From sequence record PV764938.1: DNA of 64,000 nt; one strand, 5' to 3'. This document shows positions 4,687 through 57,826 of this stretch, in pieces. The translations under genes were made by a program, and so were the position numbers. The notes below the pieces were generated by a model. That model worked only from the letters and a program-made list of their open reading frames with translations. It did no database searches and was not told where the DNA came from. Within the stretch, counting starts at the first letter, position 1. Every line of letters starts with the position of its first letter.

Positions 4687-5084
4687 CTGTTCAACAGCGG
4701 GTAGCCGAGAAGCTTGCGTTTCTCGGCTATTCTATTGTCTACGTGGATGTCACTGGATTTCATGAACTCTGCCGGTTTTATGAACCTTCCCATATGAGCA
4801 GCATGAATACCTACGGGTTTCTCTGCCTTGAGGAAATGGTTTGGTTTGCGCAGGATTTCGTGTCGGTACTCCGACGAAATTCCCATGAGAACGAACACTT
4901 CCTGGGAATCAAGAACGCATACGGCGAAATCCTTCACGTCGATGAGTTCGGATTAGAGTTTGCGTACTCTTCCTATTATCCGGTGGACCCGTATAGCCCT
5001 GAGCTAGAACTTTGGTTGACAGCGCATCGTAAGCTGTTAGAAGCGCAGGGAAAAGGAATCGAAGATGCAAAAACTCACCCTTAA
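4560..5084 (+). CDS. hypothetical protein (true start probably near 4683)
   Basis: Open frame fills the gap between hisS and the next gene; start unresolved. Confidence 0.5.
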   Translation: MFAAWRAKADRWWRSLRGGDRLGDRSGSPDSSSRINYEHEDITVQQRVAEKLAFLGYSIVYVDVTGFHELCRFYEPSHMSSMNTYGFLCLEEMVWFAQDFVSVLRRNSHENEHFLGIKNAYGEILHVDEFGLEFAYSSYYPVDPYSPELELWLTAHRKLLEAQGKGIEDAKTHP

Positions 5085-15998: not shown

Positions 15999-16074
15999 GG
16001 GATGGTGTTCCGGAATGGCACGGAAGCGCCTGCAAAGCGTTCGAATGTGGGTTCGATCCCCATCCATCCCTCCA
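15999..16074 (+). tRNA. tRNA-Cys(GCA)
   Basis: GGGATGG/CCATCCC acceptor, U73, CCA; loop CT-GCA-AA. Confidence 0.88.
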
Positions 16075-17576: not shown

Positions 17577-17915
17577 ATGATATCCTACATTACTGAGTCC
17601 GAAATTCTTAAACTGCCTACGTATGTCTGTGCGCGAACAACTCGTCTCCAATACGAGAACGCCGTGATGATGTGGAACCTGATTCACGACGAGAAGATGG
17701 AAGTCTACGTCTATGATTCCATCTTGGATAAACGGCTGGCCAGTGCTAGGCGCTATGATAGCGAGCATCGACTAACCGTTCACAACTTGATTATTTCGGA
17801 TTATCTTGTATTCGTACATCAGTGGGAACTTATCAAGTGCCGACTCTGCGGAGATTATTCATTCGAGGTCGTGCGCAGCGACAAGGACTATAAACTGGAA
17901 GAGCAAAATGGCTGA
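17577..17915 (+). CDS. hypothetical protein
   Basis: 112 aa ORF in operon. Confidence 0.6.
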   Translation: MISYITESEILKLPTYVCARTTRLQYENAVMMWNLIHDEKMEVYVYDSILDKRLASARRYDSEHRLTVHNLIISDYLVFVHQWELIKCRLCGDYSFEVVRSDKDYKLEEQNG

Positions 17916-18324
17916 AGAAAAAGAAGAACTCAAAATGTGGCTTGTGGTTCGCGGTGATATCGTGATCCCAAAGGGAAAGCTTGCTGCTCAAGCCGGTCAC
18001 GGATTTTGCTCGGCAATGCGTGCGGCACTTGAAAACGATGCCTGGGGCAAAGCGACCGACGAGTCCGGTTACTACGAGGGTGTTGTCGATCGCTACTTCG
18101 AGCAGAACCAGCCCAAGATCACAGTCGTTGCAAAGAATCTCGCAGCCTTAGAGCGTGCCTACAAAGAATGTATGGACGAGATGCTGCCGTGTAGCTTTAT
18201 CATCGATGAGGGCCGTACGGTGTTTCCTGAGCCCACAGCGACTGTGGTTGGGATTGGTCCGTGCCTGCGTAGTGAGCTACCGAAGTTCGTACAGCGTTTT
18301 CAACTGATGAAAGACGACGAATGA
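17908..18324 (+). CDS. peptidyl-tRNA hydrolase, Pth2 type
   Basis: KGKLAAQAGHG, QPKITV, IIDEGRTVF, TVVGIGP signatures of PTH2. Confidence 0.9.
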   Translation: MAEEKEELKMWLVVRGDIVIPKGKLAAQAGHGFCSAMRAALENDAWGKATDESGYYEGVVDRYFEQNQPKITVVAKNLAALERAYKECMDEMLPCSFIIDEGRTVFPEPTATVVGIGPCLRSELPKFVQRFQLMKDDE

Positions 18325-19109
18325 CACTTTTCGTCCTCCAAAACAATCGTATGGAACGCCTGGTCTATCCCGTGCTGGACTATTGTCGTGAGCGTGGCTA
18401 CCAGTGGCTGGATCGGTCGATGACCGATGACTTTGATTTTGACGCCGTAAACTATGAAGAGTTCGGCGGTCATCATCAGCCTATGATTGTTTATGGTTCA
18501 GTCGGTTGGTGCAAGCTGGCGGCTAATTGTTTGGTCACGGGCATGTACGTTTGGAGCGGAACAAAGGTCTTTGATTCTTACTATTGGCAGCAAACGCTGG
18601 GTAATGGCTATTTGAATCATGATGGCACGCTAGTCCGCGCTGACTCCATCGAGGACCTTTTCAGTCACTATGCGTTCCACGACAAGTACCATCTTCGTCC
18701 CTCGAATGAGGACAAGGCTTTCCTTGGTGCAGTCTACGACAGAGAGTCGTGGCTCCGACATAAGGAAGAACGCAATGTTGTGGGCCATCTTCCCGTGATG
18801 ATGAGTCCGTTGAAGAAGATCAACGCGGAATATCGCAGTTGGTTCATCGACGGTAAAATCATAGAGATCAGTCAGTATCGGCTTAACGATGTGCATGATC
18901 GTCAACGTATCACGGATCCCAAGCTGTTTGCGGTTGCCGAGGGTATTGCTGAGCAACTACAGGTGGATCATCCCTATGTGTTGGATTTCGCTGACACCGA
19001 CGATGGTTTCAAACTGATCGAGACCAATCCGCTTCATGCTTCGGGTTGGTATGCCGCTAATGTCGGCAACGTGTTGGATGCTTGGATCGAATACGTGAAT
19101 AAAAAGTAA
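18321..19109 (+). CDS. ATP-grasp protein (DUF4343/R2K-like)
   Basis: LRPSNEDKAFLG, EYRSWFIDG, YVLDFAD...LIETN ATP-grasp motifs; paralog of 34859-35629. Confidence 0.75.
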   Translation: MTLFVLQNNRMERLVYPVLDYCRERGYQWLDRSMTDDFDFDAVNYEEFGGHHQPMIVYGSVGWCKLAANCLVTGMYVWSGTKVFDSYYWQQTLGNGYLNHDGTLVRADSIEDLFSHYAFHDKYHLRPSNEDKAFLGAVYDRESWLRHKEERNVVGHLPVMMSPLKKINAEYRSWFIDGKIIEISQYRLNDVHDRQRITDPKLFAVAEGIAEQLQVDHPYVLDFADTDDGFKLIETNPLHASGWYAANVGNVLDAWIEYVNKK

Positions 19110-19117
19110 AAGAGTAT

Positions 19118-19146
19118 TTGACTCCTCGGAGTCAACTCTATACAGT
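19118..19146 (+). promoter_or_regulatory. sigma70-type promoter of Y-like RNA 1
   Basis: TTGACT-N17-TACAGT, predicted start near 19153. Confidence 0.75.
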
Positions 19147-19152
19147 AGGGAA

Positions 19153-19291
19153 TGTGGGAGCCGATTTATTTGGGTTATCTCTTATTGGAAAAGACGGGGT
19201 CAGGTTCGAATCCTGAGGGCTCCACCATTCTATGGGGCTCTGGTGTAGCGGATAGCATCGAAAACAGTCCAGATATCCACTTGCTCTCACA
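19153..19291 (+). ncRNA. YrlA-type Y RNA 1 (Ro60-binding-like stem plus permuted tRNA-like domain)
   Basis: TGTGGGAGC/GCTCTCACA terminal stem; GCCGAT/CACTTGC bulged helix; TATTTGGGTT/AGTCCAGATA stem; order T arm, acceptor-like hairpin, D arm. Confidence 0.85.
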
Positions 19292-19310
19292 CTTTCCTTT
19301 CTGTTGGTTT

Positions 19311-19332
19311 AGAGCGTCCTTCGGGGCGCTCT
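19311..19332 (+). terminator. terminator-like hairpin
   Basis: AGAGCGTCC-TTCG-GGGCGCTCT; weak U tail. Confidence 0.7.
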
Positions 19333-19414
19333 AATCGTTTCAGGAAGAAAACAGGTTGACGGCCTTCCTGTTTGTGTTAAGTTCGAGGCACAAACAACAC
19401 GGAGATCGAAACAC

Positions 19415-19888
19415 ATGTCTAATTTCCTCAAGGTCGGCGACGTATTCTTCGCAAACACGACTTTCGAATTCGCCTACGCCGATCTCGGCTCCTACGGCCA
19501 CGAAAAGCAGTACAAGAAGGGCGAATCAGTTCTCCAGGTTTCGGATCGCGGCGACACTCGCGAACGTCACATGGTCACCACCGGCTATGATCCCAAGACC
19601 GGCCGTCGGCTTGAAGTCGAATCCCATGCACACGAAAAGCATTCCAAGCAGCGCGTCGGCAAAGAGTTTGTGGTCGAAACCGTCCGCAATCTCGCACCAA
19701 GCGAACGCGATGGTATCCGCTCGGAACCGGAAGTCACGGCGCGCCGGCTCAACAAGGACGGCTCCTACGATCCCAATGGCGAACTGATCAAGTTCGTTGA
19801 TCGTCCCGAAGATCAGGGCTCCAACTATTCGACGGCCGCGACGGTCAGGGTTCACCGCAAAATGAAGCGCGTGGTCAACTTCGTATGA
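19415..19888 (+). CDS. hypothetical protein
   Basis: GGAGATC RBS; promoter at 19356. Confidence 0.75.
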   Translation: MSNFLKVGDVFFANTTFEFAYADLGSYGHEKQYKKGESVLQVSDRGDTRERHMVTTGYDPKTGRRLEVESHAHEKHSKQRVGKEFVVETVRNLAPSERDGIRSEPEVTARRLNKDGSYDPNGELIKFVDRPEDQGSNYSTAATVRVHRKMKRVVNFV

Positions 19889-20218: not shown

Positions 20219-20293
20219 TGCGGTGAGGACAACGGGTAAGTCACGAGCCTCATAAGCTTGGGAACCGGGTTCAACTCCCGGCACACGCAACCA
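20219..20293 (+). tRNA. tRNA with CAU anticodon (Met, fMet or Ile2 unresolved)
   Basis: CGAGC-CTCATAA-GCTTG anticodon arm; GGTTCAACTCC T arm; CCA; one bulged A in acceptor; U1-A72 and A11-U24 but no triple G-C anticodon stem. Confidence 0.85.
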
Positions 20294-24141: not shown

Positions 24142-24186
24142 AAATTCAACAGTTGACTACTGGCTCCAAAACAGTTAGATCAACAA

Positions 24187-24322
24187 TTGCAGGCCGATGG
24201 TGTAAGGTTATCGCATCTCAAGCCGGAAACAGAGGTTCGAATCCTCTACCCCGCACCAACTGAGTGGGGTTCGTCTAGTGGTTAGGACAACGTAAATGGT
24301 CTTATCCGACACTTGCCTGCAA
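24187..24322 (+). ncRNA. YrlA-type Y RNA 2
   Basis: TTGCAGGC/GCCTGCAA terminal stem; GCCGATG/CACTTGC; T arm AGAGG-TTCGAAT-CCTCT; acceptor-like ACCCCGC/GTGGGGT; D arm with AGTGGTTA loop; promoter at 24153. Confidence 0.85.
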
Positions 24323-24360
24323 CCCGAGTTTCTCCTTCGGGGTCGCTGTTGAAGACAAAA

Positions 24361-24386: not shown

Positions 24387-24424
24387 ATTCTTGACTTACC
24401 AGGGCTCGTACACTAATTTGTTGC

Positions 24425-24560
24425 TGTGAGCCGATGATATAGGGTTATCTCAAAAACAGCCTTACGTGGGTTCGAATCCCTCCACAGGATTCTTTGGATC
24501 TTGTGTAGCCGAGTGGTTAGGCAGCCGTCTCAAAGGTCCTACATCTAACACTTGCTCACA
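24425..24560 (+). ncRNA. YrlA-type Y RNA 3
   Basis: TGTGAGC/GCTCACA terminal stem; GCCGATG/CACTTGC; T arm GTGGG-TTCGAAT-CCCTC; acceptor-like CACAGGA/TCTTGTG; D arm GCC-GAGTGGTTA-GGC; promoter TTGACT-N17-TAATTT at 24391. Confidence 0.85.
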
Positions 24561-24571
24561 CTGTATTGCGT

Positions 24572-33094: not shown

Positions 33095-34010
33095 ATGACG
33101 CAAACGGAAACGTTTGCAGCACAATTCGGAATGAAACACTTCCAAACAGTTTGGCCGCTTAGGGCCGTTAAAGGGGCAGCATCCGCGAGGGTGTTAAAGC
33201 AAGGTTTCCCAGAAACTTGCGCCATAGCAATATGGTTCCACTAAGCAAGCACGGGCCTTCCGCGCAGGAGGTATCGTCCAAAAGGCGGTGCTAAGCGGGA
33301 AGACAAGGAGTAAGTTTGCGTCCGAAAGACGCGCTCATCGAGGCCTTACGGTGTAGATGAGTAACCCGCAAGGTATACTGCTCATGCAAAACTTGTCGAC
33401 CGCCGATGGCTAACGTGTAGTTGATTAGTTCGATGCTTAGCGGCAAAGAGCGGTCAGCAATTTGATACGGAAACGGATTGCAACGTCCGAGTTCGTAGAA
33501 AATGATTGAGTACCTCGCAAGGGGAAAGATACGCGGCGTGTAGTATTTTGTTTGGCGAAAGTCAGATGAAGCTACAGAGACAGCACGTCGTAATGGGTTT
33601 GCGATAGCATAGTGGTTATGCAACGGCCTTCTAAGCCGTCGAACGTAGGTTCAAATCCTGCTCGACATAAAAACGCAAAGACTGTCTCGGTAGTGTGTGA
33701 AAGGTGCTTAATGCTCAGGGCGAAAGCTAACTGAGTCACTCAAAGGCCGCAAGCTGGAGAGTGTTTATAGAAGAAAGTTCATAATCGGGTAGCTCCGATG
33801 AGCGGCATGCGAGTGTCGGTGGGCCGGAAACTGTAGAATAGCATACTATGACGTGTCTAATGCCTGACACTAAAAACGGCAGCATTGGTTGATACGTGTT
33901 TAGGTGAAAGCCAAGCGCGTGGATGTTAGAGGGAACCCTCCGGGTAGCACTGGAACGGGATAATCCTCAAAGGCAACTACTGGAAGCTATAATCTCAGGC
34001 TTCCCGAAAA
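33095..34010 (+). ncRNA. large ornate ncRNA, GOLLD-like
   Basis: ~915 nt without a credible ORF between a promoter and a terminator; many GNRA-capped hairpins; embedded tRNA domain. Confidence 0.65.
33598..33669 (+). tRNA. tRNA-Arg(UCU)-like domain embedded in the large ncRNA
   Basis: D arm GCAT-AGTGGTT-ATGC; anticodon arm ACGGC-CTTCTAA-GCCGT; T arm GTAGG-TTCAAAT-CCTGC; acceptor only 3 bp, no CCA. Confidence 0.75.
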
Positions 34011-48337: not shown

Positions 48338-51300
48338 TTAGTTGATTTTCTTGATGAATACTGCGCCAGCTTCCTGAACAAGGTTTGCACCAAGTGCATC
48401 GTAATCCTGGCCAGGAGCGCCCACAATAAGCGCACCCTTTGCATCCAAAGCAACTGCATGACCGAACAAGTCCTCTGGGTGACGACCGTTTGTCATTTCA
48501 GTACCAGCTTCGTCGGAGAAGCCTGCAATCTTCTCCTTGAGAGCCCATGTAGCATTCGAAGCATCCAACGCAAAGACGTAAGTTGCACCAGCGTTGGTCA
48601 TTGGGTTCTCACCATCTGCATCTGTGGACGCCATAGCGGAGCCTACCGCAATGTATCCGCCAGCCACAGCCAGTGTTTTACCAAATACTTCACCAGCATC
48701 TGGAGTCACTGTGAGCGTCTGTGTGAGTGTTAGGGTTTCGCCGTCGAATGCAAAGATGTGAACCGCGTTTGCGCCGGGTTCGCCAACAACCACTGTGTTG
48801 GTCTTTTCATCAATACCAACGGTTTCACCGAAACGACCATCCACAATACGCGATGGGCTTGTGAACTTGGCAACCATTGGGAACTGTGTGTTCTTCAGGT
48901 AGATCCAAATTGCACCAGCGTTCGAGAGTTCCAGGTCACCCGTAACGTCGAAGTCGTATTGCGGAGAACCGATGACCACGAAGTTCTTGTTTGCGGATAC
49001 CGAGTAACCGAACCAATCACCAGCGTTACGACCACGTGCCAAGCCCTGTGCGGAGAATGTACCACGGACGAACCAGTCTTCACCAACACGCTCGTAAGCC
49101 TGGACAATACCAGAGTTTGCGACCTGTGGAGCACCTGGAACGTTGTTTGCATCCGGAACACCAACAACGAACTTGTTCGTGTCAGCAGCCGCAACCGCAG
49201 CACCGAAGCGGCCATTGGTTGCACCGTTGCCGGTGTAGTCCTTCCGAGCTACCCAGTTACCTTCAGCTACGCGCTGGAATACACGGGCAAGACCTGTATC
49301 GTTGGTGTAATTGCCTGTGATGATCCAACCGTTTCGGCCAGACAATGTGCGACCGAAACCAATCGGAGCCGTTGCATCTGGAACGATTTTAGATTCTGTG
49401 TTCCACTTGTCGCCGGTCTTATTGTAGACGAACAGCGCACCACTCTTGCTCGTTGCGTTACCATAGAGGTCATAGCTGTGGAACGGAGAACCGACAACCA
49501 CGAAGTCGTGATTCGCGTAAACGGAGTAGCCGAACTGATCGCCAGCAGCACGACCATTTGAGCGACCGGGAACCGAATAATCCGCGTTTGCGTCTGTGAG
49601 CGAACCATTCGAGTTGATCGTGAAGGTCTTTGCACGACCAGCACCCGAAAGCGCAGGCTGTGGACCAACACCCTGGGAAGCACCACTGTCGAGTTCGATA
49701 AGTCGTGTACCGCTTACGATCTCTGCGACCTTACCTGCACCAGCCTCGATGTGACGGGCAATTGTCCAAGCACCGTTTGTTGCTGTGAGTTCGACCATCT
49801 TCGCTGCATCGTTAGTACCGGCATAGAGCTTGTCACCGATTAGCTTCAATGTCTTACCGTAGCCGAGCAATTCCGAGTTTGTTTCCAAGTTGAGTTTTTC
49901 ACGGAATGTATAGGTTGCGCCCTTCTTGTCGAATACGAAGATTGCACCCTGACCATCACGGAAGTTGACACCGTTGTTGCCGTAATCGTGACCAGGAGCA
50001 CCAACCAGGATCTGTGTTGGTGTAACTTCAACAGCCGAACCGAAGAGATCCGATGCAAAGCGACCGTGGGAAACACCATCACCAACAATAGAACCCGCGC
50101 TTGTGAGCGTTGGAACCGTGATGTCGAATGTTGTGAAACCACCCGAGTTGGAGACTGTTGGCTTGACACCATCTGTATTACGACGTGTCTGACCCAGTAC
50201 AATCTTATCACCGACCAATGTAAGCGAGATACCCAAATCAACAGTCGCTGTAAGCGTTGTCTTTGCTTGGCTTACGAAGTTGCTGCCGTCGAACGCGAAC
50301 AATTCCACAGCATTTTTGTCTGGGCTACCAGCGAATGTCGGAACCTCAAGCGTTGCAATCGAGGAGTACGGCTGCGAACCGAGAACCAACAGGTTGTTGT
50401 CGTTGACTTCCAGAGCAAAGCCGAAGTAATCGGCATTTGTTGCCTTGGACGATGTGATCTTCTGGATAAGCTGCCACTTACCGTTGATGCGCTTGTATTC
50501 AAATACCGCACCCGAGTTAGCTGGAAGTGGATCGCCGCTGGAGTCATATTCGTGACCAGGAGCACCAACGTAAATCTGATTCTCATCCTTGATACCAACG
50601 GCATGACCGAAGAAGTCTGTAGCCGAACGGGAGTTGATGATACCAGGAGCCACAACAGCATCGGAATCCAAGAGTGTTTCGAGAGTCGTTGCAACGTCCT
50701 TGATGACTTCGTAACCACCCGGACGACCGTCCAGCGTAAATGTCGCAGTACGTGTCGAACCGCCACCACCACCACCGGCAATTGCTAGGAAGTCGTTGCC
50801 ACGAGCAATACCCGCGAGACCACCACCACAACCAGCGCCATCAATAGCCGTGTTCAGCGAGCGGCCGCCTAGACCACCAAGACCATACTTGCGGTTCTGA
50901 TTTCGGTTAGAGAGGTCCGTACCGATTTGTCCACCAGCACCACCACCGCCGACTACGATCTTGAGCTCTTCGCCTTCTGTGACGCTAAGAGTACCTGTTA
51001 CGAATGCACCTGCACCGCCGCGACCACTACGACGTGTTGCCCAACCCGAAGCATGGTTTGCAGCACCACCACCAGCGCCCCAAAGCGCAACTGTGATTTC
51101 AGTTACACCAGCTGGGACTGTGAAGGTCTGGTCAAAGCCCGTGTAGTTGAATACCACGTCTGTTGTACCGTGTGTGATTACGACACGAGCGTCTTCACCG
51201 ATTGCACCAACAGTATTACCGCCAGCGCCAGTTGCGTTTGCATTTGCCGAGTTTGCACGAGCTGCACCCAAGCTGAGGATCTGCGAGCCACCGTTTGGAA

Positions 51301-54300
51301 CCAAGTTAGAACCACCCTGGCCACCTGCACCGAAGTTGGTGTTGAATGCACCACCAGCGCCACCACCGATGTAACCGGCACCACCACCGCCACCGGCGGA
51401 TGTTGCCGCGGAGTAAGCTTCAGCATCAGCACCTGCATTGATACCGCGCGAACCACCCCATACGTTTCCGTTCAGGACTCGTGTACGGATTGCACCGCTC
51501 TGAGTAACACTTGGGTAACCGTTTGCTGTTGGCTTTGCCATGACCAATGCGTTGCCGTCCAGTGTCAGAATAGCATTCGTCAGGGTGTTTTCCATCGTTG
51601 CGGATGTGTCGATCTTCCAGAAACGGTCATCTACGAGCTTGTAAACGAACACGCGATCAACGTTTGGAATTGCAACAGCGAGCTTACCATCGACCCAGCT
51701 CAGGTTCATCGCGGATTGCGAAGCTCCCGAAACAGGATTTACAAAGTGGCTGTGATACTCGAACATACTCTTTGGTGTATTCCAACGATAGACGAATACC
51801 TTACCCCAAGTGTTCTGACCAGCGACTTGGAATGTGGTTGCGCTGTGCATGAACTGAACGTCGTTATGCGAACCAATTGCAAGCATCGAACCATCTGGAG
51901 AAAGTGCAAGTCCAGTCTGACCGAAACCAGCGTTTGAGCTCATGTAAACGTGAGAAAGCTCGTTTACGCCATTCGAGTTGACAGTCTGTGTTACCACACC
52001 AACGTTGCTAACCGCGAATGAATCAGTACCCTCGGTGTAGTTGATCGGGATAGCAGCACCAAAAGCGTTAGCCGTTCCCGTATTAAAGTTACCGTTAGTC
52101 GCACCGAGCATACCCTGCAAAGTTTCCTTATCCCAAGCTGCACGGGTCTGTGATACTTGAGCTGTAGCGGTGAGAGTAGCAGCCGCAGTCGATGTCAACG
52201 GAGTACCAAATTTGCCAGCACCATCACGCTTGAATACAACTGGTGTTTCACGGTTGCTGTTAACGTAGAGATAATCATCATTCAAACCAACGAACAGACC
52301 GTAGTTTGTAACTGCTGGTGCGTTTTCGAATGTGATCTTCTGATCGTAATAGAAACGTTCGTCTTCGGCCAACTTATATGTGTAGACTGCACCGCGGTTT
52401 GTTGTGAATGATACACCAGTAGTGTTCCAATCGTAACCAGGAACACCAACTGCCAATGCGCCATTGTGAATTGCCACGGAGTAACCGAAGTTATCACCAG
52501 CATTACGATTGTTGATGTTGCCTTCGTTCGTGTAAACTGTACGGGCGCGAGTGCTTGCCAACACCGTCTCGAAAATACCCGAAGCGATGGAGTTTACCGT
52601 GCGCAAAGGCGAACCCGAGTAGTACATGTCACGAACTGAATCATAAGCTAGACCAGTGCCAAAAGCCTGAGTACTCGTCGTGCCATTCATTGTAAACGTG
52701 TCAGTCCACGTCGAAGTAATGCCGATGTTGCCCTGAGCAAAACGTGTAAATGCACCGTTATTGCCATTGTTATACGCGCTGGTGATAAAGAAATCGTTGT
52801 TATACTCATTGAGGACACGTCCGAAGAACGCATTCGAAGTGGACAAGGTTTCGATAACCTTGGTGTTCAGACGCCACTTGTTTGTATCAGTGTCCAGGTA
52901 ATAGACAAACACTGCACCCATATTTGACGATGTATTTGCAGTCGAATCAACACGATATACGTGAGTCGGAGCACCAATCATCAGGATGTTCTTATTGCTA
53001 TTCAGCTTGACAGCGGTACCAAATGCGTCGTTGGCATTACGACCGTATGCGATGTTTGCATTCGAACCATAAACGATTGTGCCCTTCTCATAAGCACCAT
53101 TCGTGTGCAGGGGAACAGCGTTATCTGTTCCCTTTGTCCAAGTAGAACCAGAACGATTGAAGTCTGCGAAGCTACCAGCAGCCAACTGAACGTTTGTGCT
53201 TGGCGACCATGTGGTGCTACCACCAACAAACTTGTCATCAGAGAACAATGCACCAGAGTACATGTTTCGGCCACCAGCAGAGTTGTTGATGCGCGACTCG
53301 AATGTTGCGGTTGTTCCATCGAACGTGTATGTCGCAGCCTGCGATACTGCATTGCTCGAATGCAGAAGAATACGGTTTCCACGCATACCAACTCGAGAAC
53401 CCCAGAATTGGCTTGAGGAATCGGTCGCTGGGTTTGTCAATAGTGTCTTGAAAGTCCAAACGCCTTGTTCGTTCTTTTCGAAGATTGTACCAGCACCCAT
53501 GTTTGTGCGTGTTGCGGAGCCACCGTCAATCTTGTTGTACTGTGGGATACCAATAACGACACGACCATCCTTGACGACCAACGATGTAGCGAAGAAGCCA
53601 TTGCCAACACGGTCATCTACCGCAATATTGGTTGGTTTGTAGCTGACACTATCCACGTTATATGTGCCATCGACATCCTGAGTGTAGTGACGGGCGTAAC
53701 CAACTCCGGTCTTAGCACCATCAACAGCATCTGGCGAACCCGTAATAAAGTTGGCCTCAGTGCTGAAGAAACGAGCACTATTGTAGACGAATGGATCGTT
53801 GGTGTTGCTTTCGCTGAAACGCTCCAGGAATACATAACCGTTTTCGCCCTTCTTGAACACTTCAACGCCAGCATTTGTTGTCGTTGTCTTAGAAATCAAG
53901 TAGTCGCCCTTGATGTCGAAGGACAGACCGAACGCCTGCGATCCTCCAAGAACCGACGGCAAGATGAGTTCCTTTTCATCCCAACCCTGCAGAAGCGCAT
54001 TGTATTCGTAACGGTGAATACCACCCATGTTGACATGAACGTTATTGTTGTTTGGTGTCTGTCGGTTACCATAAGCGCCTACAAATACCGAAGTTCCATC
54101 AGTTTTCACATCATAGCCAAAGTAATCGTTGGCGATTTTGTTGTTGCTCGCCGAACCCGGATATGTGAATGTCTGAGTGTATGTGTATTCGTTTGTGCCG
54201 TTCCATACAAGCGGAGCAATATAACCGCTTGATGTGTTGTCCCAATCCGGATTTACGCGGACACCATTGGAGATCGAGTAATAGAGTTGATCTCCCAAAT

Positions 54301-57300
54301 ACTTGAGTGGCAAAATCAAAATTGGGAATTGTGTTCCTCCACTTGGAACACTGTAAGTTGCACCAGTAAACGCCGTATAAGGGACCGCAACACCCGGCCA
54401 AGCTGCATTGTAAATCTTTGTAGTTTTCAGGACTGTAGTCTTACGTGCCAACAAATCAGTACCAGCAATAGACAGATCTGTCATGCGACCTGTGCTCTCA
54501 ACTTGCCATACCTTTTTAGCGTTGGCTGGGACAAAGTTGAGACCCGAGCCGTACATGATGTTGAAGTAAACGTTTTCGCGAGTACCGAAGTTGTAATCGG
54601 TGAGTGCAGTCTTAGTCGCCGTGTCGATGCCGTGGATACCAAACTGACGGCTACCAAAATCAATGCTGTTGTTGGAACGCTGAACGATCTTCGTTTTGTA
54701 ACGGAAGTTTTCGTTAGTATCAAAGATATAACCGGAACCTGTAGCCGATGGATTATACTCACCAGAGTGACCAGTGTATCGGCTTGCAGGAGCACCAACA
54801 ACAAGGCGATCCTTATTGATACTTACGAAGCGACCAAAATTACTGCTATCATTACGACGCTGTTGGTGACCAGGGACAACAACTGGATTGTCGATCTTCA
54901 TCCATTCATCACCAACTCGTGTTGTGATTTCGAGCTGACCAGCACCGGATACAGATTGCTCAATGTGTTGGAAACTATTGATGTTCTTCTTATCGAGTTC
55001 GTTTTTAACGACTTCGTTCGAGTAAGCGTTTGGAAGACCAGAAAGGATTGTATGGGCATCCCAAATATATGTGGAACTTCCACGACCTTGTGCGCTTGGT
55101 GTTGGAATTGCCGCAGCAAAGTTTTCACCACCCAAGTTTGGTGTGAATGGGTTGTGGTATGCAGCAACCGAGCGAACCTTGAAATCACGAAAGTTCATCA
55201 TTGGAGGTTGAATCGTCGACTGTGCGCTGTCGTAACCCCAGACAATATTTGTGTCAGCATCGATGAATGTTAGACCAGTGACATCGTACGTATTGCGGAG
55301 TTCACCGTTGACGTAAGTACGAATCTGATTACCATCACGCACCATCGCCAAATGTGTCCAAGTCTTGCGCTGAACTGTTCCAAACTCATAACGCTTCTTA
55401 ACGGCGCCATCAGTTGTGAGTTCAAATACACACTGACCTCCGTTTGCTTCACTCTCACCAACAACGTTGTAGAGGCCCCATTGACCGGAACGACGCATCA
55501 TTGGCAGCATAATTCCTGGATTTTCGTTCCCTGGAACAGAACGTGGCTCAGCAATCCAATACCACTGCTCGAATGTGAAGTTTGGTAGGTTTGCAAATGC
55601 TTTACCAGACAAACGAATGAACGCAGCCTGCGCCGGTATAGTCGAAAGACTTACTGAGAAATTTGAGCGGTCGTTGCTGTATGCGTTTTCCCAGTAATTG
55701 CCGGAACTACGATTGACAAATGTCATGTTCGTACCGTTGATACCAGTCAAATAGTTACCGTCCAATGGAATCATACGCGAATACATGACAACGTCAGAAA
55801 CTGCTGAGTCACTCAGGTTCGTATTAAGAGTCCAAACGCCTCCAACCTTCTCGAACACATACTTCGTAGAGTTTCCGGAGGCTTCAATCGAAATTAGCGA
55901 ATCCTTAACATTGACTGCGGATCCGAAGTTAGAAGCAGCAACTGGGAGGCCAGTTAGACGTGCTGTTTGACCCCAGGAGCCTGTGTTCTCGAATACGAAA
56001 ACAGTGCCGGCACCAGTTGTCAAAGTTGTACCAGTGTCGTCGTAGCCATTCTTGCTGCTGATAGCAATCGTGTTATTGAAAGCAGAGAATTTGTAACCGA
56101 AATTGTCCGAAGCAATACGCGAGTTAACACCATTTGCGGAGAGCTTTGCCGAGTTTTCCCAAGTCGAAACATTCAAGTCGTAAACGAATACCGCGCCAGC
56201 CGCCGTAACACTGTTGACGCCAGTAGCGTCGTAGGAGTTTCCAGGAGCACCAACAAACAGACGACCACCAGCAAAAGCAACAGCAGTACCGAAGCCATCG
56301 CCTGCGTTGCGGCCACCAGTACCAGTTGCTACGAGCTTCTGTACTTGGTTCCAAACACCAGCAGTACGCTTAAAGATGAATACCGCACCAGCGCCAGTCA
56401 ACAGGTTTGCACCGGATGCGTCGTAGGACTGTCCAGGCGCTCCTACAGCAGCCCAATCCTCAAACACAGCAACGCTAGTACCGAACAGGTCCTGCGCTAG
56501 ACGAGCGTTTGTGCCCGTCGGAACAAGCTTCTTGGACTGGGTCCAAGACCAAACTTCATCAGCGTCTAGATCTTCACTCAGTTCAACTTCATCCCACTCG
56601 ATGACAACGATACCGTTACCGCCAGGTGTTGTGGAATCACCACCGATACCGTAACCGTCGAATTCGGAGCTAACCTTGAGCTTACCACCATCGTAGGCAA
56701 CTACATCGTAGATCATCTGTTCATCAGTGATCATCGGAGCGAATGCTGGGGTTGGATCAACCATCGAAGAACCGCCCGAACCCGAACCACCAACCTTATA
56801 GTTTGTTGTGGCGACGTTGTAGGCACTGCGGTAACCATAACCATCAGGACCAGCAGCACCACCAGAGAAGCCACCGCCACCAGCGCCGTTCGAGAATACG
56901 TTTCCGGGAATCACAGACGCAGGGCTTGCGTTACCGCCCGCAAGGCGAGTAGTCCAGTAGGTGTCATCGGCGATCGCGAAACGAATATCAAATGTGGAAC
57001 CAAACAGAACGTAGTTTGGGTAACGAGCTACAGCTTCGTTGTAACCGTAGATGTAGCCCTTTGCGCCCTTCATGTTCAACGAGTATTCAATTGGATGAGT
57101 CACAGTTCTAATAGTGACACCATCACCAGCTACGATACCACCGTAACCACCAGGACCATCAACACCTGCACCACCACCGGCGCCAGCTGTGATAAGGTCA
57201 CCGAGGAGTGGATGATTGATAGCAGAACGACCGCCACCAGAACCACCGATACCACCAGCTACTGTGAGATAACCACCACCGCCGAAAGCTGCGGTTGTGC

Positions 57301-57826
57301 CAGCTGCAACACCACCTTGACCAACGATAACGTTGTAGGTCTGTCCTGGGTTCACGAGGATTGTCGCCTTAACATAAGCGCCATCACCGCCGCGATGAGT
57401 ACCCGTAGTGTTTCCGCCACCGCCACCAGCGATCATCTGGACTGTGATGCGATCGACATTTTCGGGAACTGTAAATGTTTGATTTGCACCAGTGCTGGAG
57501 AATGTCTGCTTGTGATGTGTCTTCAGCTTAGAGTTGCGAGCCACATACTTGACAGTCTTCTCGAACATCCAAGCTGCACCGGCATTGGCCAAGTTGTTTG
57601 CACCAGTTGCATCATACGTGTGATTTGCTGTTCCGACCAACAAACTGTTGGAATGTGTATCGAGAACTGAGCCAAAACGGTCACCTGCGCGAATCGCGTT
57701 GGTTCCAGTTGGGCGAATCTGGTTCTTGAAGGTAACCTTCTTCTCTTGAACTCCGGCAGCTTCTTTCGAATTGCCCTTCAGTACAAGATCATTACCATAT
57801 GAAGAATTGTCGGAAATAGAGGTCAT
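48338..57826 (-). CDS. giant FG-GAP repeat beta-propeller protein with two glycine-rich domains and a LamG-like domain (probable virion fibre/adhesin)
   Basis: 3162 aa; many GDxFGxSV...VGAPxxxYDxxGxN...GAVxxF repeats; GGGGAG-rich segments; WTHLAMVRDG LamG-like segment; GGAG RBS. Confidence 0.85.
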   Translation of the reverse strand: MTSISDNSSYGNDLVLKGNSKEAAGVQEKKVTFKNQIRPTGTNAIRAGDRFGSVLDTHSNSLLVGTANHTYDATGANNLANAGAAWMFEKTVKYVARNSKLKTHHKQTFSSTGANQTFTVPENVDRITVQMIAGGGGGNTTGTHRGGDGAYVKATILVNPGQTYNVIVGQGGVAAGTTAAFGGGGYLTVAGGIGGSGGGRSAINHPLLGDLITAGAGGGAGVDGPGGYGGIVAGDGVTIRTVTHPIEYSLNMKGAKGYIYGYNEAVARYPNYVLFGSTFDIRFAIADDTYWTTRLAGGNASPASVIPGNVFSNGAGGGGFSGGAAGPDGYGYRSAYNVATTNYKVGGSGSGGSSMVDPTPAFAPMITDEQMIYDVVAYDGGKLKVSSEFDGYGIGGDSTTPGGNGIVVIEWDEVELSEDLDADEVWSWTQSKKLVPTGTNARLAQDLFGTSVAVFEDWAAVGAPGQSYDASGANLLTGAGAVFIFKRTAGVWNQVQKLVATGTGGRNAGDGFGTAVAFAGGRLFVGAPGNSYDATGVNSVTAAGAVFVYDLNVSTWENSAKLSANGVNSRIASDNFGYKFSAFNNTIAISSKNGYDDTGTTLTTGAGTVFVFENTGSWGQTARLTGLPVAASNFGSAVNVKDSLISIEASGNSTKYVFEKVGGVWTLNTNLSDSAVSDVVMYSRMIPLDGNYLTGINGTNMTFVNRSSGNYWENAYSNDRSNFSVSLSTIPAQAAFIRLSGKAFANLPNFTFEQWYWIAEPRSVPGNENPGIMLPMMRRSGQWGLYNVVGESEANGGQCVFELTTDGAVKKRYEFGTVQRKTWTHLAMVRDGNQIRTYVNGELRNTYDVTGLTFIDADTNIVWGYDSAQSTIQPPMMNFRDFKVRSVAAYHNPFTPNLGGENFAAAIPTPSAQGRGSSTYIWDAHTILSGLPNAYSNEVVKNELDKKNINSFQHIEQSVSGAGQLEITTRVGDEWMKIDNPVVVPGHQQRRNDSSNFGRFVSINKDRLVVGAPASRYTGHSGEYNPSATGSGYIFDTNENFRYKTKIVQRSNNSIDFGSRQFGIHGIDTATKTALTDYNFGTRENVYFNIMYGSGLNFVPANAKKVWQVESTGRMTDLSIAGTDLLARKTTVLKTTKIYNAAWPGVAVPYTAFTGATYSVPSGGTQFPILILPLKYLGDQLYYSISNGVRVNPDWDNTSSGYIAPLVWNGTNEYTYTQTFTYPGSASNNKIANDYFGYDVKTDGTSVFVGAYGNRQTPNNNNVHVNMGGIHRYEYNALLQGWDEKELILPSVLGGSQAFGLSFDIKGDYLISKTTTTNAGVEVFKKGENGYVFLERFSESNTNDPFVYNSARFFSTEANFITGSPDAVDGAKTGVGYARHYTQDVDGTYNVDSVSYKPTNIAVDDRVGNGFFATSLVVKDGRVVIGIPQYNKIDGGSATRTNMGAGTIFEKNEQGVWTFKTLLTNPATDSSSQFWGSRVGMRGNRILLHSSNAVSQAATYTFDGTTATFESRINNSAGGRNMYSGALFSDDKFVGGSTTWSPSTNVQLAAGSFADFNRSGSTWTKGTDNAVPLHTNGAYEKGTIVYGSNANIAYGRNANDAFGTAVKLNSNKNILMIGAPTHVYRVDSTANTSSNMGAVFVYYLDTDTNKWRLNTKVIETLSTSNAFFGRVLNEYNNDFFITSAYNNGNNGAFTRFAQGNIGITSTWTDTFTMNGTTSTQAFGTGLAYDSVRDMYYSGSPLRTVNSIASGIFETVLASTRARTVYTNEGNINNRNAGDNFGYSVAIHNGALAVGVPGYDWNTTGVSFTTNRGAVYTYKLAEDERFYYDQKITFENAPAVTNYGLFVGLNDDYLYVNSNRETPVVFKRDGAGKFGTPLTSTAAATLTATAQVSQTRAAWDKETLQGMLGATNGNFNTGTANAFGAAIPINYTEGTDSFAVSNVGVVTQTVNSNGVNELSHVYMSSNAGFGQTGLALSPDGSMLAIGSHNDVQFMHSATTFQVAGQNTWGKVFVYRWNTPKSMFEYHSHFVNPVSGASQSAMNLSWVDGKLAVAIPNVDRVFVYKLVDDRFWKIDTSATMENTLTNAILTLDGNALVMAKPTANGYPSVTQSGAIRTRVLNGNVWGGSRGINAGADAEAYSAATSAGGGGGAGYIGGGAGGAFNTNFGAGGQGGSNLVPNGGSQILSLGAARANSANANATGAGGNTVGAIGEDARVVITHGTTDVVFNYTGFDQTFTVPAGVTEITVALWGAGGGAANHASGWATRRSGRGGAGAFVTGTLSVTEGEELKIVVGGGGAGGQIGTDLSNRNQNRKYGLGGLGGRSLNTAIDGAGCGGGLAGIARGNDFLAIAGGGGGGSTRTATFTLDGRPGGYEVIKDVATTLETLLDSDAVVAPGIINSRSATDFFGHAVGIKDENQIYVGAPGHEYDSSGDPLPANSGAVFEYKRINGKWQLIQKITSSKATNADYFGFALEVNDNNLLVLGSQPYSSIATLEVPTFAGSPDKNAVELFAFDGSNFVSQAKTTLTATVDLGISLTLVGDKIVLGQTRRNTDGVKPTVSNSGGFTTFDITVPTLTSAGSIVGDGVSHGRFASDLFGSAVEVTPTQILVGAPGHDYGNNGVNFRDGQGAIFVFDKKGATYTFREKLNLETNSELLGYGKTLKLIGDKLYAGTNDAAKMVELTATNGAWTIARHIEAGAGKVAEIVSGTRLIELDSGASQGVGPQPALSGAGRAKTFTINSNGSLTDANADYSVPGRSNGRAAGDQFGYSVYANHDFVVVGSPFHSYDLYGNATSKSGALFVYNKTGDKWNTESKIVPDATAPIGFGRTLSGRNGWIITGNYTNDTGLARVFQRVAEGNWVARKDYTGNGATNGRFGAAVAAADTNKFVVGVPDANNVPGAPQVANSGIVQAYERVGEDWFVRGTFSAQGLARGRNAGDWFGYSVSANKNFVVIGSPQYDFDVTGDLELSNAGAIWIYLKNTQFPMVAKFTSPSRIVDGRFGETVGIDEKTNTVVVGEPGANAVHIFAFDGETLTLTQTLTVTPDAGEVFGKTLAVAGGYIAVGSAMASTDADGENPMTNAGATYVFALDASNATWALKEKIAGFSDEAGTEMTNGRHPEDLFGHAVALDAKGALIVGAPGQDYDALGANLVQEAGAVFIKKIN

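What the first reader, a model, noticed from the sequence alone, without database searches (positions are those of the whole stretch)
19217..19240. Y-like RNA 1 has an alanine-identity acceptor with internal CCA
Seen: GGGCTCC-A-CCA (19217-19227), a 6-nt linker, then GGGGCTC (19234-19240) give G1-C72, G2-C71, G3.U70 and A73. Y-like RNA 2 also keeps ACCA (24255-24258) but has G3-C70; RNA 3 has no CCA. Established: G3.U70 with A73 is the AlaRS identity of tRNA-Ala and tmRNA, and alphaproteobacterial permuted tmRNA precursors lose a similar linker through RNase P and 3' trimming. Inference: this RNA may mature into a two-piece, alanylatable Y RNA, a form I do not know to be described.
Basis: partly seen in the sequence, partly recalled or inferred. 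Interest (0 to 1): 0.75.

Follow-up and report, generated by a model that had tools for sequence, protein, structure and literature searches.

The report
Phage Y RNA with alanine-tRNA end
A giant Sinorhizobium phage encodes a Ro60-partner "Y RNA" whose built-in tRNA look-alike has every acceptor-stem feature that the alanine-charging enzyme reads in tRNA-Ala, followed by an internal CCA, so it may be cut into two pieces and loaded with alanine; the two-piece form is already known from one bacterium, the alanine signature is not.

Summary
The window is the first 64 kb of Sinorhizobium jumbo phage Phosso. RNA 1 (19153-19291) is one of three paralogous YrlA-class Y RNAs. Each has a Ro60-binding stem and a tRNA-like domain in the order T arm, acceptor hairpin, D arm. 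The phage encodes Ro60 and a CCA-adding-type enzyme.

In 68 non-redundant relatives the acceptor end comes in two designs. One is closed, often by a GNRA or UUCG tetraloop. The other is open: a 7-bp stem, N73, CCA and a variable linker (20/68; about 1 expected), usually with U at -1, the base bacterial RNase P prefers. RNA 1 is of the open design.

RNA 1 also carries G1-C72, G2-C71, G3.U70, G4-C69 and A73. A distant orthologue keeps these despite compensatory changes elsewhere in the stem. The same set recurs in 8 of 72 family members.

Against: the closest relative has a closed GCAA hairpin in the syntenic RNA, so the trait is dispensable. No ends or charging data exist.

Prior art: M. smegmatis YrlA is cut by RNase P, CCA-tailed and Ro60-bound as two pieces (Chen 2014). 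So only the alanine identity and the encoded CCA are new. Verdict: partly supported; new variant of a known kind.

The parts
19118..19146 (+). sigma-70-like promoter of RNA 1 (TTGACT, 17 nt, TACAGT); the predicted start is about 19153
   Evidence: RNA 2 and RNA 3 also have a TTGACT -35 box at matching distance, read.
19153..19291 (+). Y-like RNA 1, a YrlA-class Y RNA (whole molecule as modelled)
   Evidence: Own covariance model R1: 105.9 bits, E 6e-24, full length. MFE fold z = -2.99.
19153..19164 (+). Ro60-binding stem, 5' strand, with bulged C19162 followed by G19163 and A19164
   Evidence: Pairs with 19281-19291. The 9 outer pairs covary in 29 sequences. The motif NNGC-C-GA / UU-GCNN matches the Y RNA consensus (my knowledge; Chen 2014).
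19173..19179 (+). GGUUAUC, invariant in all 29 aligned family members; its first two G belong to helix H2 (19170-19174 pairs with 19268-19272)
19200..19216 (+). T arm (5-bp stem, loop UUCGAAU)
19217..19223 (+). acceptor stem 3' strand (positions 66-72), with U70 = 19221
19224..19227 (+). A73 and the internal CCA (74-76); predicted mature 3' end of the 5' piece at 19227
   Evidence: CCA at this position in 20/68 relatives.
19228..19233 (+). 6-nt linker UUCUAU, predicted to be removed; U19233 is position -1
   Evidence: The linker differs in length and sequence in the orthologue L012 (AUCACGUAU). U at -1 in 14/20 CCA-class against 9/48 closed-class RNAs.
19234..19240 (+). acceptor stem 5' strand (positions 1-7), with G3 = 19236; predicted RNase P site between 19233 and 19234
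   Evidence: Precedent: M. smegmatis YrlA.
19241..19258 (+). U8, G9 and the D arm (stem 19243-46 / 19255-58, loop AGCGGAUA)
19278..19291 (+). CACUUGC motif and the Ro60-binding stem 3' strand
19309..19334 (+). terminator-like hairpin (11 bp, UUCG loop) with a weak U tail
   Evidence: Not listed by the terminator scan.
24186..24323 (+). Y-like RNA 2, a paralogue of the open design (ACCA 24255-24258, linker ACUGA, G3-C70)
   Evidence: 106.3 bits. CCA is invariant in 7 orthologues while N73, the stem and the linker vary.
24423..24562 (+). Y-like RNA 3, a paralogue of the closed design (no CCA)
   Evidence: 91.4 bits

Best explanation
RNA 1 is a phage-encoded YrlA-class Y RNA. It is transcribed from its own promoter. 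Its paired 5' and 3' ends bind the phage Ro60 protein, and its middle folds as a tRNA without an anticodon arm.

It belongs to an 'open' subclass in which the acceptor stem is exactly tRNA-like: 7 bp, a discriminator base and an encoded CCA. The two strands are joined only by a short, unconstrained linker.

Inferred steps:
1. Host RNase P cuts 5' of G19234.
2. 3' exonucleases trim the six linker bases back to CCA19227. The CCA-adding enzyme of host or phage keeps that end repaired.
3. The two pieces (about 75 and 58 nt or more) stay together through the acceptor stem, helix H2 and the Ro stem.
4. The freed end carries G1-C72, G2-C71, G3.U70, G4-C69 and A73. AlaRS needs only the acceptor helix, so host AlaRS is expected to alanylate it.

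What the alanyl end is for is unknown. It may protect against exonucleases, capture EF-Tu, or do something else.

Shown: the sequence features, family membership, the Ro60 gene, and the comparative signatures. Inferred: cleavage, trimming and charging.

My estimates: processing about 0.55; charging, given processing, about 0.7.
For: Family and partner:
- Covariation in all five helices, 25 of 30 pairs with compensatory changes.
- Model R1 finds only these three full-length copies in 463 kb of the phage.
- R1 also finds the RNA just upstream of the Ro gene in mycobacteriophage Cali at 80 bits.
- The phage Ro protein has TROVE plus vWA_Ro60 domains. A PolyA_pol/tRNA_NucTran2_2 nucleotidyltransferase is also encoded.

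Open design:
- NCCA in 20/68 relatives, p 3e-20, and only at positions 74-76.
- In seven RNA 2 orthologues CCA is invariant, while N73 is A, U or G, the linker is 4-10 nt with different sequences, and the stems covary.
- U at -1 in 14/20 open against 9/48 closed RNAs, p 9e-5.
- None of the open class ends in a tetraloop. 25 of 52 closed ones do, mostly GCAA or UUCG.
- The encoded CCA follows the genome's tRNA-gene convention. Phosso has it in 54/56 tRNA genes. The actinophages Forza and Gilson have it in 1/11 and 0/5, and their Ala-type Y RNAs read ACU....

Alanine set:
- Kept in orthologue L012, with compensatory changes at 6-67 and 7-66.
- Present in 8 of 72 members with positions 4-7 free to vary.
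- Found in further phage contigs: L361 and L337 match the whole model; L307 and L328 match only its tRNA-like core.

Stability: the two pieces cofold at -44.4 kcal/mol, against -18.2 and -10.3 alone.

Precedent: M. smegmatis YrlA is cleaved by RNase P, CCA-tailed and Ro60-bound in two halves (PMC4201824; bioRxiv 312249).

Established knowledge: a G3.U70 minihelix suffices for AlaRS (Francklyn and Schimmel 1989; Hou and Schimmel 1988).
Against: - There are no RNA-end or charging data for this or any phage Y RNA.
- The closest relative (RCUH01001110.1; neighbouring proteins 75-95% identical) has a syntenic RNA with the same D arm and Ro stem. Its acceptor is a closed 8-bp hairpin capped by GCAA, with no CCA and no G3.U70. 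The trait is therefore dispensable and the T/acceptor module is exchangeable.
- Other RNA 1-type RNAs have G3-C70 or closed ends.
- A 6-nt tether between CCA and position -1 may hinder RNase P docking. Permuted tmRNA linkers are longer (Rfam consensus).
- If acceptor modules are simply captured from tRNA genes, about 5% would be Ala-type by descent. On that null, 8/72 is only mildly enriched.
- An encoded CCA is equally expected from such descent.
- Bound Ro60 or a missing elbow contact could block AlaRS.
Confidence: 0.42

Rival explanations
1. One-piece Y RNA. The acceptor loop is never opened. CCA, A73 and G3.U70 are leftovers of a tRNA-derived module, or serve as a static mimic of a tRNA-Ala end that binds some protein. 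The RNA works like the closed YrlA of Salmonella, as a Ro60 tether or gate.
For: - Most YrlA RNAs are closed and are not cut by RNase P.
- The closest relative has a closed GCAA hairpin at the same place.
- The acceptor/T module is only 51% identical to that relative while the flanks are 83-92% identical, which points to module exchange.
- The encoded CCA mirrors the genome's tRNA genes, as descent would predict.
- A73 can pair with U(-1), extending the helix to 8 bp.
Against: - A relic CCA should decay as the adjacent linker and N73 have. Instead it is invariant in seven RNA 2 orthologues and 20-fold enriched at one exact position.
- U(-1) is enriched even where it cannot pair with N73, as in the U73/U-1 cases.
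- The open class avoids tetraloops.
- M. smegmatis shows that a 7-bp YrlA acceptor is cut in vivo.
Confidence: 0.33
2. The RNA is processed but not functionally charged. RNase P opens the loop and the CCA end merely stabilises the two-piece RNA against exonucleases such as PNPase. The alanine-like stem is incidental.
For: - Chen et al. proposed that the CCA end protects the cleaved RNA.
- N73 and the stem identity vary freely in RNA 2-type RNAs, which keep CCA but show no consistent identity set.
- Only 3 of the 20 CCA-class RNAs in the unbiased sample carry the alanine set.
Against: - A free ACCA end on a G1-C72/G2-C71/G3.U70/G4-C69 helix is a textbook AlaRS substrate. Avoiding charge would need active shielding.
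- The alanine set is kept in L012 and recurs with A73.
Confidence: 0.18
3. It is not a Y RNA. It is a permuted tRNA gene, a small two-piece tmRNA, or the junction of two decayed tandem tRNA genes.
For: - The T arm / 3' strand / ACCA / linker / 5' strand order is that of permuted tmRNA. This is the best Rfam hit.
- True permuted tmRNA genes occur in phage contigs (L341, L297, L314).
- Y-like RNAs of related phages sit inside tRNA arrays.
Against: - The Rfam hit is 19.5 bits against a gathering score of 47 and covers only 41 nt.
- ARAGORN finds no tmRNA in 463 kb of the phage.
- There is no tag frame and there are no pseudoknots.
- There is no anticodon arm. ARAGORN calls no tRNA here, and the only Rfam tRNA-clan match is tRNA-Sec at 12.8 bits, far below threshold.
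- The closing stem carries the conserved Ro-binding motif and covaries.
- The RNA has its own promoter and terminator.
Confidence: 0.04

Closest known systems
Mycobacterium smegmatis YrlA (Chen et al. 2014, RNA 20:1715)
   Same: [quoted passage not shown]
- Cut by RNase P at the tRNA 5' site.
- The 5' half ends in CCA.
- Both halves remain in the RNP.
- The authors suggested aminoacylation.
   Different: - In M. smegmatis only part of the CCA is encoded and CA is added after nibbling. Here the whole CCA is encoded.
- An alanine identity set has not been reported for it, and I could not retrieve its sequence to check.
- The Ro gene is adjacent there. Here it lies roughly 200-270 kb away.
- That RNA is bacterial. 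This one belongs to a jumbo phage of an alphaproteobacterium.
Salmonella Typhimurium YrlA (structure: Wang et al. 2018; Rfam RF02553)
   Same: The same module order (Ro stem, T arm, acceptor hairpin, D arm), the tRNA L-shape, and conserved T and D loops.
   Different: - The Salmonella acceptor is a closed 6-bp hairpin with no CCA, and it is not an RNase P substrate.
- The Rfam model does not detect the Phosso RNAs even at E = 10.
Two-piece (permuted) tmRNA of alphaproteobacteria (Keiler, Shapiro and Williams 2000; Rfam RF04321)
   Same: - The gene order is T arm, acceptor 3' strand, ACCA, intervening segment, acceptor 5' strand starting GGGG.
- G3.U70 and A73 are present, and U precedes G1 in the consensus.
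- The intervening segment is excised to give two base-paired pieces, one of them alanylated.
   Different: - There is no tag reading frame and there are no pseudoknots.
- A real D arm is present.
- The outer helix is a Ro60-binding stem.
- The linker is 6 nt rather than tens of nt.
tRNA-Ala acceptor minihelix and microhelix substrates of AlaRS
   Same: G1-C72, G2-C71, G3.U70, G4-C69, C5-G68, A73 and CCA. The first five pairs are those I recall for E. coli tRNA-Ala. The acceptor/T stack is 12 bp.
   Different: The 3' end is not free in the primary transcript. The body is a Y RNA bound by a 60-kDa protein ring.
Circularly permuted tRNA genes of Cyanidioschyzon merolae (Soma et al. 2007)
   Same: The 3' half precedes the 5' half. 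The acceptor is closed by a linker that RNase P and a 3' nuclease open.
   Different: Those transcripts are circularised to create an anticodon loop and become working tRNAs. Here no anticodon arm can form.

Membership tests
YrlA-class Y RNA | The 5' and 3' ends pair into a Ro60-binding helix with a bulged C and conserved flanking bases | tested here: met
   GUGGGAGC-C-GA / UU-GCUCUCAC. The helix covaries in 29 sequences.
YrlA-class Y RNA | The effector domain mimics tRNA in the order T arm, acceptor stem-loop, D arm | tested here: met
   The T-loop is UUCGAAU and the D-loop carries GG.
YrlA-class Y RNA | A Ro60 (TROVE) protein is encoded in the same genome, usually next to the RNA | tested here: met
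   TROVE 1.4e-47 and vWA_Ro60 5.5e-47 at record 290301-291965. The gene is not adjacent; it lies roughly 200-270 kb away.
YrlA-class Y RNA | Match to the curated Rfam model RF02553 | tested here: not met
   No hit at E up to 10 on 19130-19320. Known phage YrlAs reach only 27-36 bits against a gathering score of 69. My own model R1 bridges the Phosso RNAs to the Ro-adjacent RNA of phage Cali at 80 bits.
YrlA-class Y RNA | Physical binding to Ro60 | not testable with these tools
   Needs co-immunoprecipitation or EMSA.
RNase P-processed two-piece YrlA (M. smegmatis type) | Seven-base-pair acceptor stem stacked on a five-base-pair T stem | tested here: met
   19217-23 pairs with 19234-40, and the T stem is 19200-04 / 19212-16. 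An eighth A73-U(-1) pair is possible.
RNase P-processed two-piece YrlA (M. smegmatis type) | Cleavage 5' of position 1 and a CCA 3' end on the 5' half, in vivo | not testable with these tools
   Only indirect evidence: conserved CCA, U(-1), variable linkers, and no tetraloops.
AlaRS substrate (tRNA-Ala / tmRNA identity) | G3.U70 wobble pair in the acceptor helix | tested here: met
   G19236.U19221. Kept in orthologue L012.
AlaRS substrate (tRNA-Ala / tmRNA identity) | A73, with G1-C72, G2-C71 and G4-C69 | tested here: met
   Both Phosso tRNA-Ala genes carry G1-C72, G2-C71, G3.U70, A73 and CCA; pair 4-69 is G-C in one and C-G in the other.
AlaRS substrate (tRNA-Ala / tmRNA identity) | A free 3'-terminal CCA | not testable with these tools
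   The CCA is internal in the gene. A free end depends on processing.
Permuted two-piece tmRNA | Permuted acceptor junction | tested here: inconclusive
   RF04321 scores 19.5 bits against a gathering score of 47, over model positions 36-93 only.
Permuted two-piece tmRNA | Tag-peptide reading frame and pseudoknots | tested here: not met
   ARAGORN finds no tmRNA in the window or in 463 kb of the genome. The remainder of the RNA is a Ro stem.
Permuted tRNA gene | An anticodon arm that can be recovered after joining the ends | tested here: not met
   ARAGORN calls no tRNA here and the Rfam tRNA-clan match (tRNA-Sec, 12.8 bits) is far below threshold. The closing helices are the Ro stem and H2.

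The most novel reading that the evidence does not exclude
A recurrent subclass of Ro60-bound Y RNAs, in jumbo phages, actinophages and some bacteria, matures into two-piece molecules with a genuine tRNA-Ala acceptor end and is alanylated in the cell. This would create a charged tRNA mimic without an anticodon, carried on a Ro60 ring. It could dock EF-Tu or the ribosome, or feed or sequester enzymes that use Ala-tRNA. It would be a third kind of natural alanyl-RNA beside tRNA-Ala and tmRNA.
Probability: 0.3. Interest if true: 0.85.

Novelty: new variant of a known kind. Interest (0 to 1): 0.62.

Why it matters
What the tRNA-like domain of bacterial and phage Y RNAs does has been open since 2014. 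Chen et al. [quoted passage not shown]

This work gives a concrete, testable candidate. The RNA has a fully encoded CCA and the complete alanine identity set, and its phage and host can both be cultured. It also gives a sequence rule that separates 'open' from 'closed' Y RNAs in many genomes: a 7-bp stem, N73, CCA, a loose linker and U at -1.

If charging is real, Ro60 RNPs would be linked directly to the translation apparatus, and tmRNA would no longer be the only non-tRNA that AlaRS charges in bacteria. If it is not real, the conserved internal CCA still needs an explanation.

Tried and rejected
- Rfam at gathering and at permissive thresholds: no YrlA hit on the Phosso RNAs. There is only a weak partial match to permuted tmRNA, so Rfam could neither assign nor exclude the family. 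I built my own model instead.
- blastn of RNA 1 against 50,697 phage records: only the phage itself. The RNA is too short and too diverged for blastn.
- The search for related loci with the upstream ATP-grasp protein: no relatives.
- The pattern scans of metagenomes and genomes returned mostly archaeal tRNA-Gly genes that happen to fit the pattern. I removed these by requiring a paired closing stem and an acceptor hairpin.
- Single-linkage clustering of backbones, meant to count independent lineages, chained 39 RNAs into one cluster and was uninformative. I therefore give no phylogeny-corrected statistic.
- tRNA-dimer reading: rejected. ARAGORN calls no tRNA over the Y-like RNAs of Phosso, L012, L307 or L337.
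- Alternative pairing of the 5' Ro strand GGAGCC with the 3' acceptor strand GGCUCC, which would make a tRNA-sized fold ending in CCA. It is possible in RNA 1 but not in RNA 2, so I treated it as coincidence.
- Retrieving M. smegmatis YrlA to inspect its 3:70 pair.
- Literature: no held paper contains both 'YrlA' and 'alanyl-tRNA synthetase', and the top-ranked papers of a YrlA / RNase P / CCA / aminoacylated search reported no alanine identity. The 2020 Annual Review on bacterial Ro60 was not held.

Full report
**Context.** The window is bases 1-64000 of Sinorhizobium phage Phosso (PV764938.1), a circular 469,473-bp jumbo phage of S. meliloti; the match is 100% identical. The finding lies in an unannotated 305-bp gap. 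Upstream is an R2K-clade ATP-grasp gene (18321-19109), itself preceded by a PTH2 peptidyl-tRNA hydrolase. Downstream is a hypothetical gene (19415-19888).

Read from the sequence:
- GGGCTCC 19217-19223
- A 19224
- CCA 19225-19227
- TTCTAT 19228-19233
- GGGGCTC 19234-19240

These give G1-C72, G2-C71, G3.U70, G4-C69, C5-G68, U6.G67, C7-G66, then A73 and CCA. A canonical T arm (19200-19216) abuts position 66. U8, G9 and a D arm (19241-19258) follow position 7.

**What the RNA is.**
- Three paralogues lie at 19153-19291, 24186-24323 and 24423-24562. Each follows a TTGACT-type promoter and precedes a hairpin.
- All three share the motif NNGC-C-GAU ... GGUUAUC ... CACUU-GCNN. This is the Ro60-binding helix with a bulged C.
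- Pattern scans of viral, metagenome and genome collections recovered many relatives, chiefly in uncultured phages of 375-480 kb.
- An alignment of 29 of them gives a consensus of 30 pairs, 25 with compensatory changes. The helices are the Ro stem (9 bp), an inner helix (5 bp), the T stem (5), the acceptor (7) and the D stem (4).
- A covariance model built from that alignment (R1) finds exactly these three full-length RNAs in 463 kb of the phage. It also finds two short copies that lack the tRNA-like domain.
- R1 finds an RNA immediately upstream of the Ro gene of mycobacteriophage Cali (80 bits), and others near the Ro genes of Gordonia phage Forza and Streptomyces phage Gilson.
- Rfam's YrlA model touches the Cali RNA and two of the Gilson RNAs below threshold. 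It misses the Phosso RNAs entirely.
- Phosso encodes a Ro60 protein (TROVE plus vWA_Ro60) at 290301-291965 and a CCA-adding-type nucleotidyltransferase.
- ARAGORN and Rfam call neither a tRNA nor a tmRNA here above threshold.

So 'Y-like RNA' is right. These are YrlA-class Y RNAs as defined by Chen et al. 2014.

**Two designs of acceptor end.** I compared 68 non-redundant family members with a perfect 7-bp acceptor.
- Twenty have N73 followed exactly by CCA, where about one is expected (p 3e-20). CCA occurs at no later loop offset.
- These 'open' RNAs have loose loops, 3-12 nt in 18 of 20 once any extra closing pair is counted, and never a tetraloop. Twenty-five of 52 'closed' RNAs end in tetraloops, mostly GCAA or UUCG.
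- The base before G1 is U in 14 of 20 open RNAs against 9 of 48 closed ones (p 9e-5). U at -1 is the base bacterial RNase P prefers (established knowledge). It is enriched even where it cannot pair with N73.
- In seven orthologues of RNA 2, CCA is invariant. N73 is A, U or G. The linker is ACUGA, AACUAU, ACUAU, UUGU, AUCUAU, AAACUUAU or UCUAAACUAU. The stems covary.

That pattern points to selection on CCA and none on the linker, which is what a removed spacer predicts.

The encoded CCA also follows each genome's tRNA convention. Phosso tRNA genes encode CCA in 54 of 56 cases; Forza does in 1 of 11 and Gilson in 0 of 5. The Ala-type Y RNAs of those two phages read ACU... instead. This fits tRNA-like maturation. 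It fits descent from tRNA genes equally well.

**The alanine set.**
- RNA 1's orthologue in a 480-kb uncultured phage (L012) is syntenic, with Pth2 upstream. It reads AGGCUCC-A-CCA-AUCACGUAU-GGGGCCU.
- In that orthologue pairs 1-5, A73 and CCA are unchanged. Pair 6-67 went from U.G to C-G, pair 7-66 went from C-G to U-A, and the linker differs.
- The combination G1-C72, G2-C71, G3.U70, A73 occurs in 8 of 72 members, with positions 4-7 varying. The eight are Phosso RNA 1, L012, L058:713-846, L017:2618-2748, a Fimbriimonas MAG, a Sericytochromatia MAG, Forza and Gilson.
- A deliberately biased scan adds phage contigs L361 and L337, which match the whole model. It also adds L307 and L328, which match only the tRNA-like core.
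- With independent columns I estimate that fewer than one of 72 would carry the set. If acceptor modules are sampled from tRNA genes, roughly 5% would be Ala-type, so 8 of 72 is only mildly high.
- I could not correct for shared ancestry.

**Counter-evidence.**
- Contig RCUH01001110.1 is Phosso's nearest relative. Its neighbouring proteins are 75-95% identical.
- Its syntenic RNA 1 has an identical D arm and near-identical ends (83% and 92%). Its T/acceptor module is only 51% identical and is closed: UCAUGUUG-GCAA-CAACGUGG.
- The same contig keeps the UCCA of RNA 2.
- The open alanine-type end is therefore exchangeable and not essential to the RNA's core role.
- The 6-nt tether is also much shorter than the intervening segment of permuted tmRNA.

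**Prior art.**
- Chen et al. 2014 showed that M. smegmatis YrlA has a 7-bp acceptor. It is cut by RNase P in vivo and by M1 RNA in vitro.
- The products are an 82-nt 5' half, which gains CA to complete a CCA tail, and a 65-nt 3' half. Both immunoprecipitate with Ro60, and the authors noted possible aminoacylation.
- Wang et al. 2018 restate this and note that most YrlAs are closed.
- No held paper contains both 'YrlA' and 'alanyl-tRNA synthetase', and the top-ranked papers of a related search report no alanine identity.

So the two-piece CCA-ended Y RNA is known. The alanine identity set, the fully encoded CCA and the open/closed dichotomy appear to be new.

**Mechanism proposed.**
1. The RNA is transcribed from about 19153.
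2. It folds, and Ro60 binds the closing stem.
3. RNase P cleaves between U19233 and G19234.
4. Exonucleases trim back to CCA19227.
5. The two pieces stay paired (cofold -44.4 kcal/mol against -18.2 and -10.3 apart).
6. Host AlaRS charges the end. No phage AlaRS is annotated; the phage does encode CysRS, ThrRS and a short SerRS.

Steps 3-6 are inferred. I put processing at about 0.55 and charging, given processing, at about 0.7.

**Rivals.**
- A never-opened loop: 0.33.
- Opening without meaningful charging: 0.18.
- Not a Y RNA at all: 0.04.

**Verdict.** The finding is a new variant of a known kind. It is directly testable with a cultured phage and host.

Noticed in passing
window 33533-34001 (+), with a tRNA at 33598-33669: A full-length GOLLD RNA (Rfam RF02032, 186.6 bits, E 6e-51) with a tRNA nested inside it. 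It lies in an unannotated gap of the phage record.
   Followed up: no
L009:6435-6501 and L009:6663-6736 (record 420435-420501 and 420663-420736; outside the window): Two unannotated miniature Y RNAs between tRNA genes of the large tRNA array. They have the Ro-binding stem and the GGUUAUC motif but no tRNA-like domain. R1 scores them at 41 and 34 bits. The phage therefore has five Y-like RNAs.
   Followed up: partly
window 17908-19109: A PTH2-type peptidyl-tRNA hydrolase and an R2K-clade ATP-grasp enzyme sit directly upstream of RNA 1. The Pth2-RNA 1 adjacency is kept in the 480-kb uncultured phage (L012). A second R2K ATP-grasp gene sits beside an Rnl1-type RNA ligase at record 167468-169529.
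   Followed up: partly
L074:4488-4620 and L112:2185-2323 (contig RCUH01001110.1): This is the closest relative of Phosso. Its RNA 1 orthologue has the T/acceptor module replaced by a closed hairpin capped by GCAA, while the rest of the RNA is 83-92% identical. Its RNA 2 orthologue keeps CCA. This is evidence that the minihelix module is swapped between Y RNAs.
   Followed up: yes
L363:5004-5132 (Gordonia phage Forza): A YrlA-like RNA with the alanine set (CCGCUCC-ACUAU-GGGGCGG) overlaps a feature annotated as tRNA-Gln (5007-5074). This is probably a mis-annotation of the 5' half of a Y RNA. A tmRNA gene lies 150 nt upstream.
   Followed up: partly
L018:7965-8106, L019:4194-4331, L011:11309-11472: Y-like 5' halves (Ro strand, GGUUAUC, T arm, 7-nt strand, ACCA) with no complementary 5' acceptor strand downstream. 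Their partner strand, if any, is unknown.
   Followed up: no
L341, L297, L314 (viral contigs): Phage-encoded permuted (two-piece) tmRNA genes. They turned up in the scan for TCC-ACCA-linker-GGGG and are recognisable by the tmRNA-type 5' sequence after the acceptor strand.
   Followed up: no
L290, L307, L323, L328 (viral contigs): RNAs that match only the tRNA-like core of the model (T arm, acceptor with ACCA and linker, D arm). They are closed by outer stems without the Ro motif. Some sit between tRNA genes. They may be a related class of permuted tRNA mimics that does not depend on Ro60.
   Followed up: partly
window 16001-16069 and 20220-20289: Two tRNA genes (annotated Cys-GCA and Met-CAT) score unusually low on the Rfam tRNA model (32 and 38 bits) and have acceptor-stem mismatches. 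ARAGORN does not call the second one.
   Followed up: no
window 48338-57826 (-) and 57900 onward (-): Two very large reading frames on the minus strand. One is 3162 aa. The other runs out of the window and is annotated 57900-68978. Both are labelled hypothetical.
   Followed up: no
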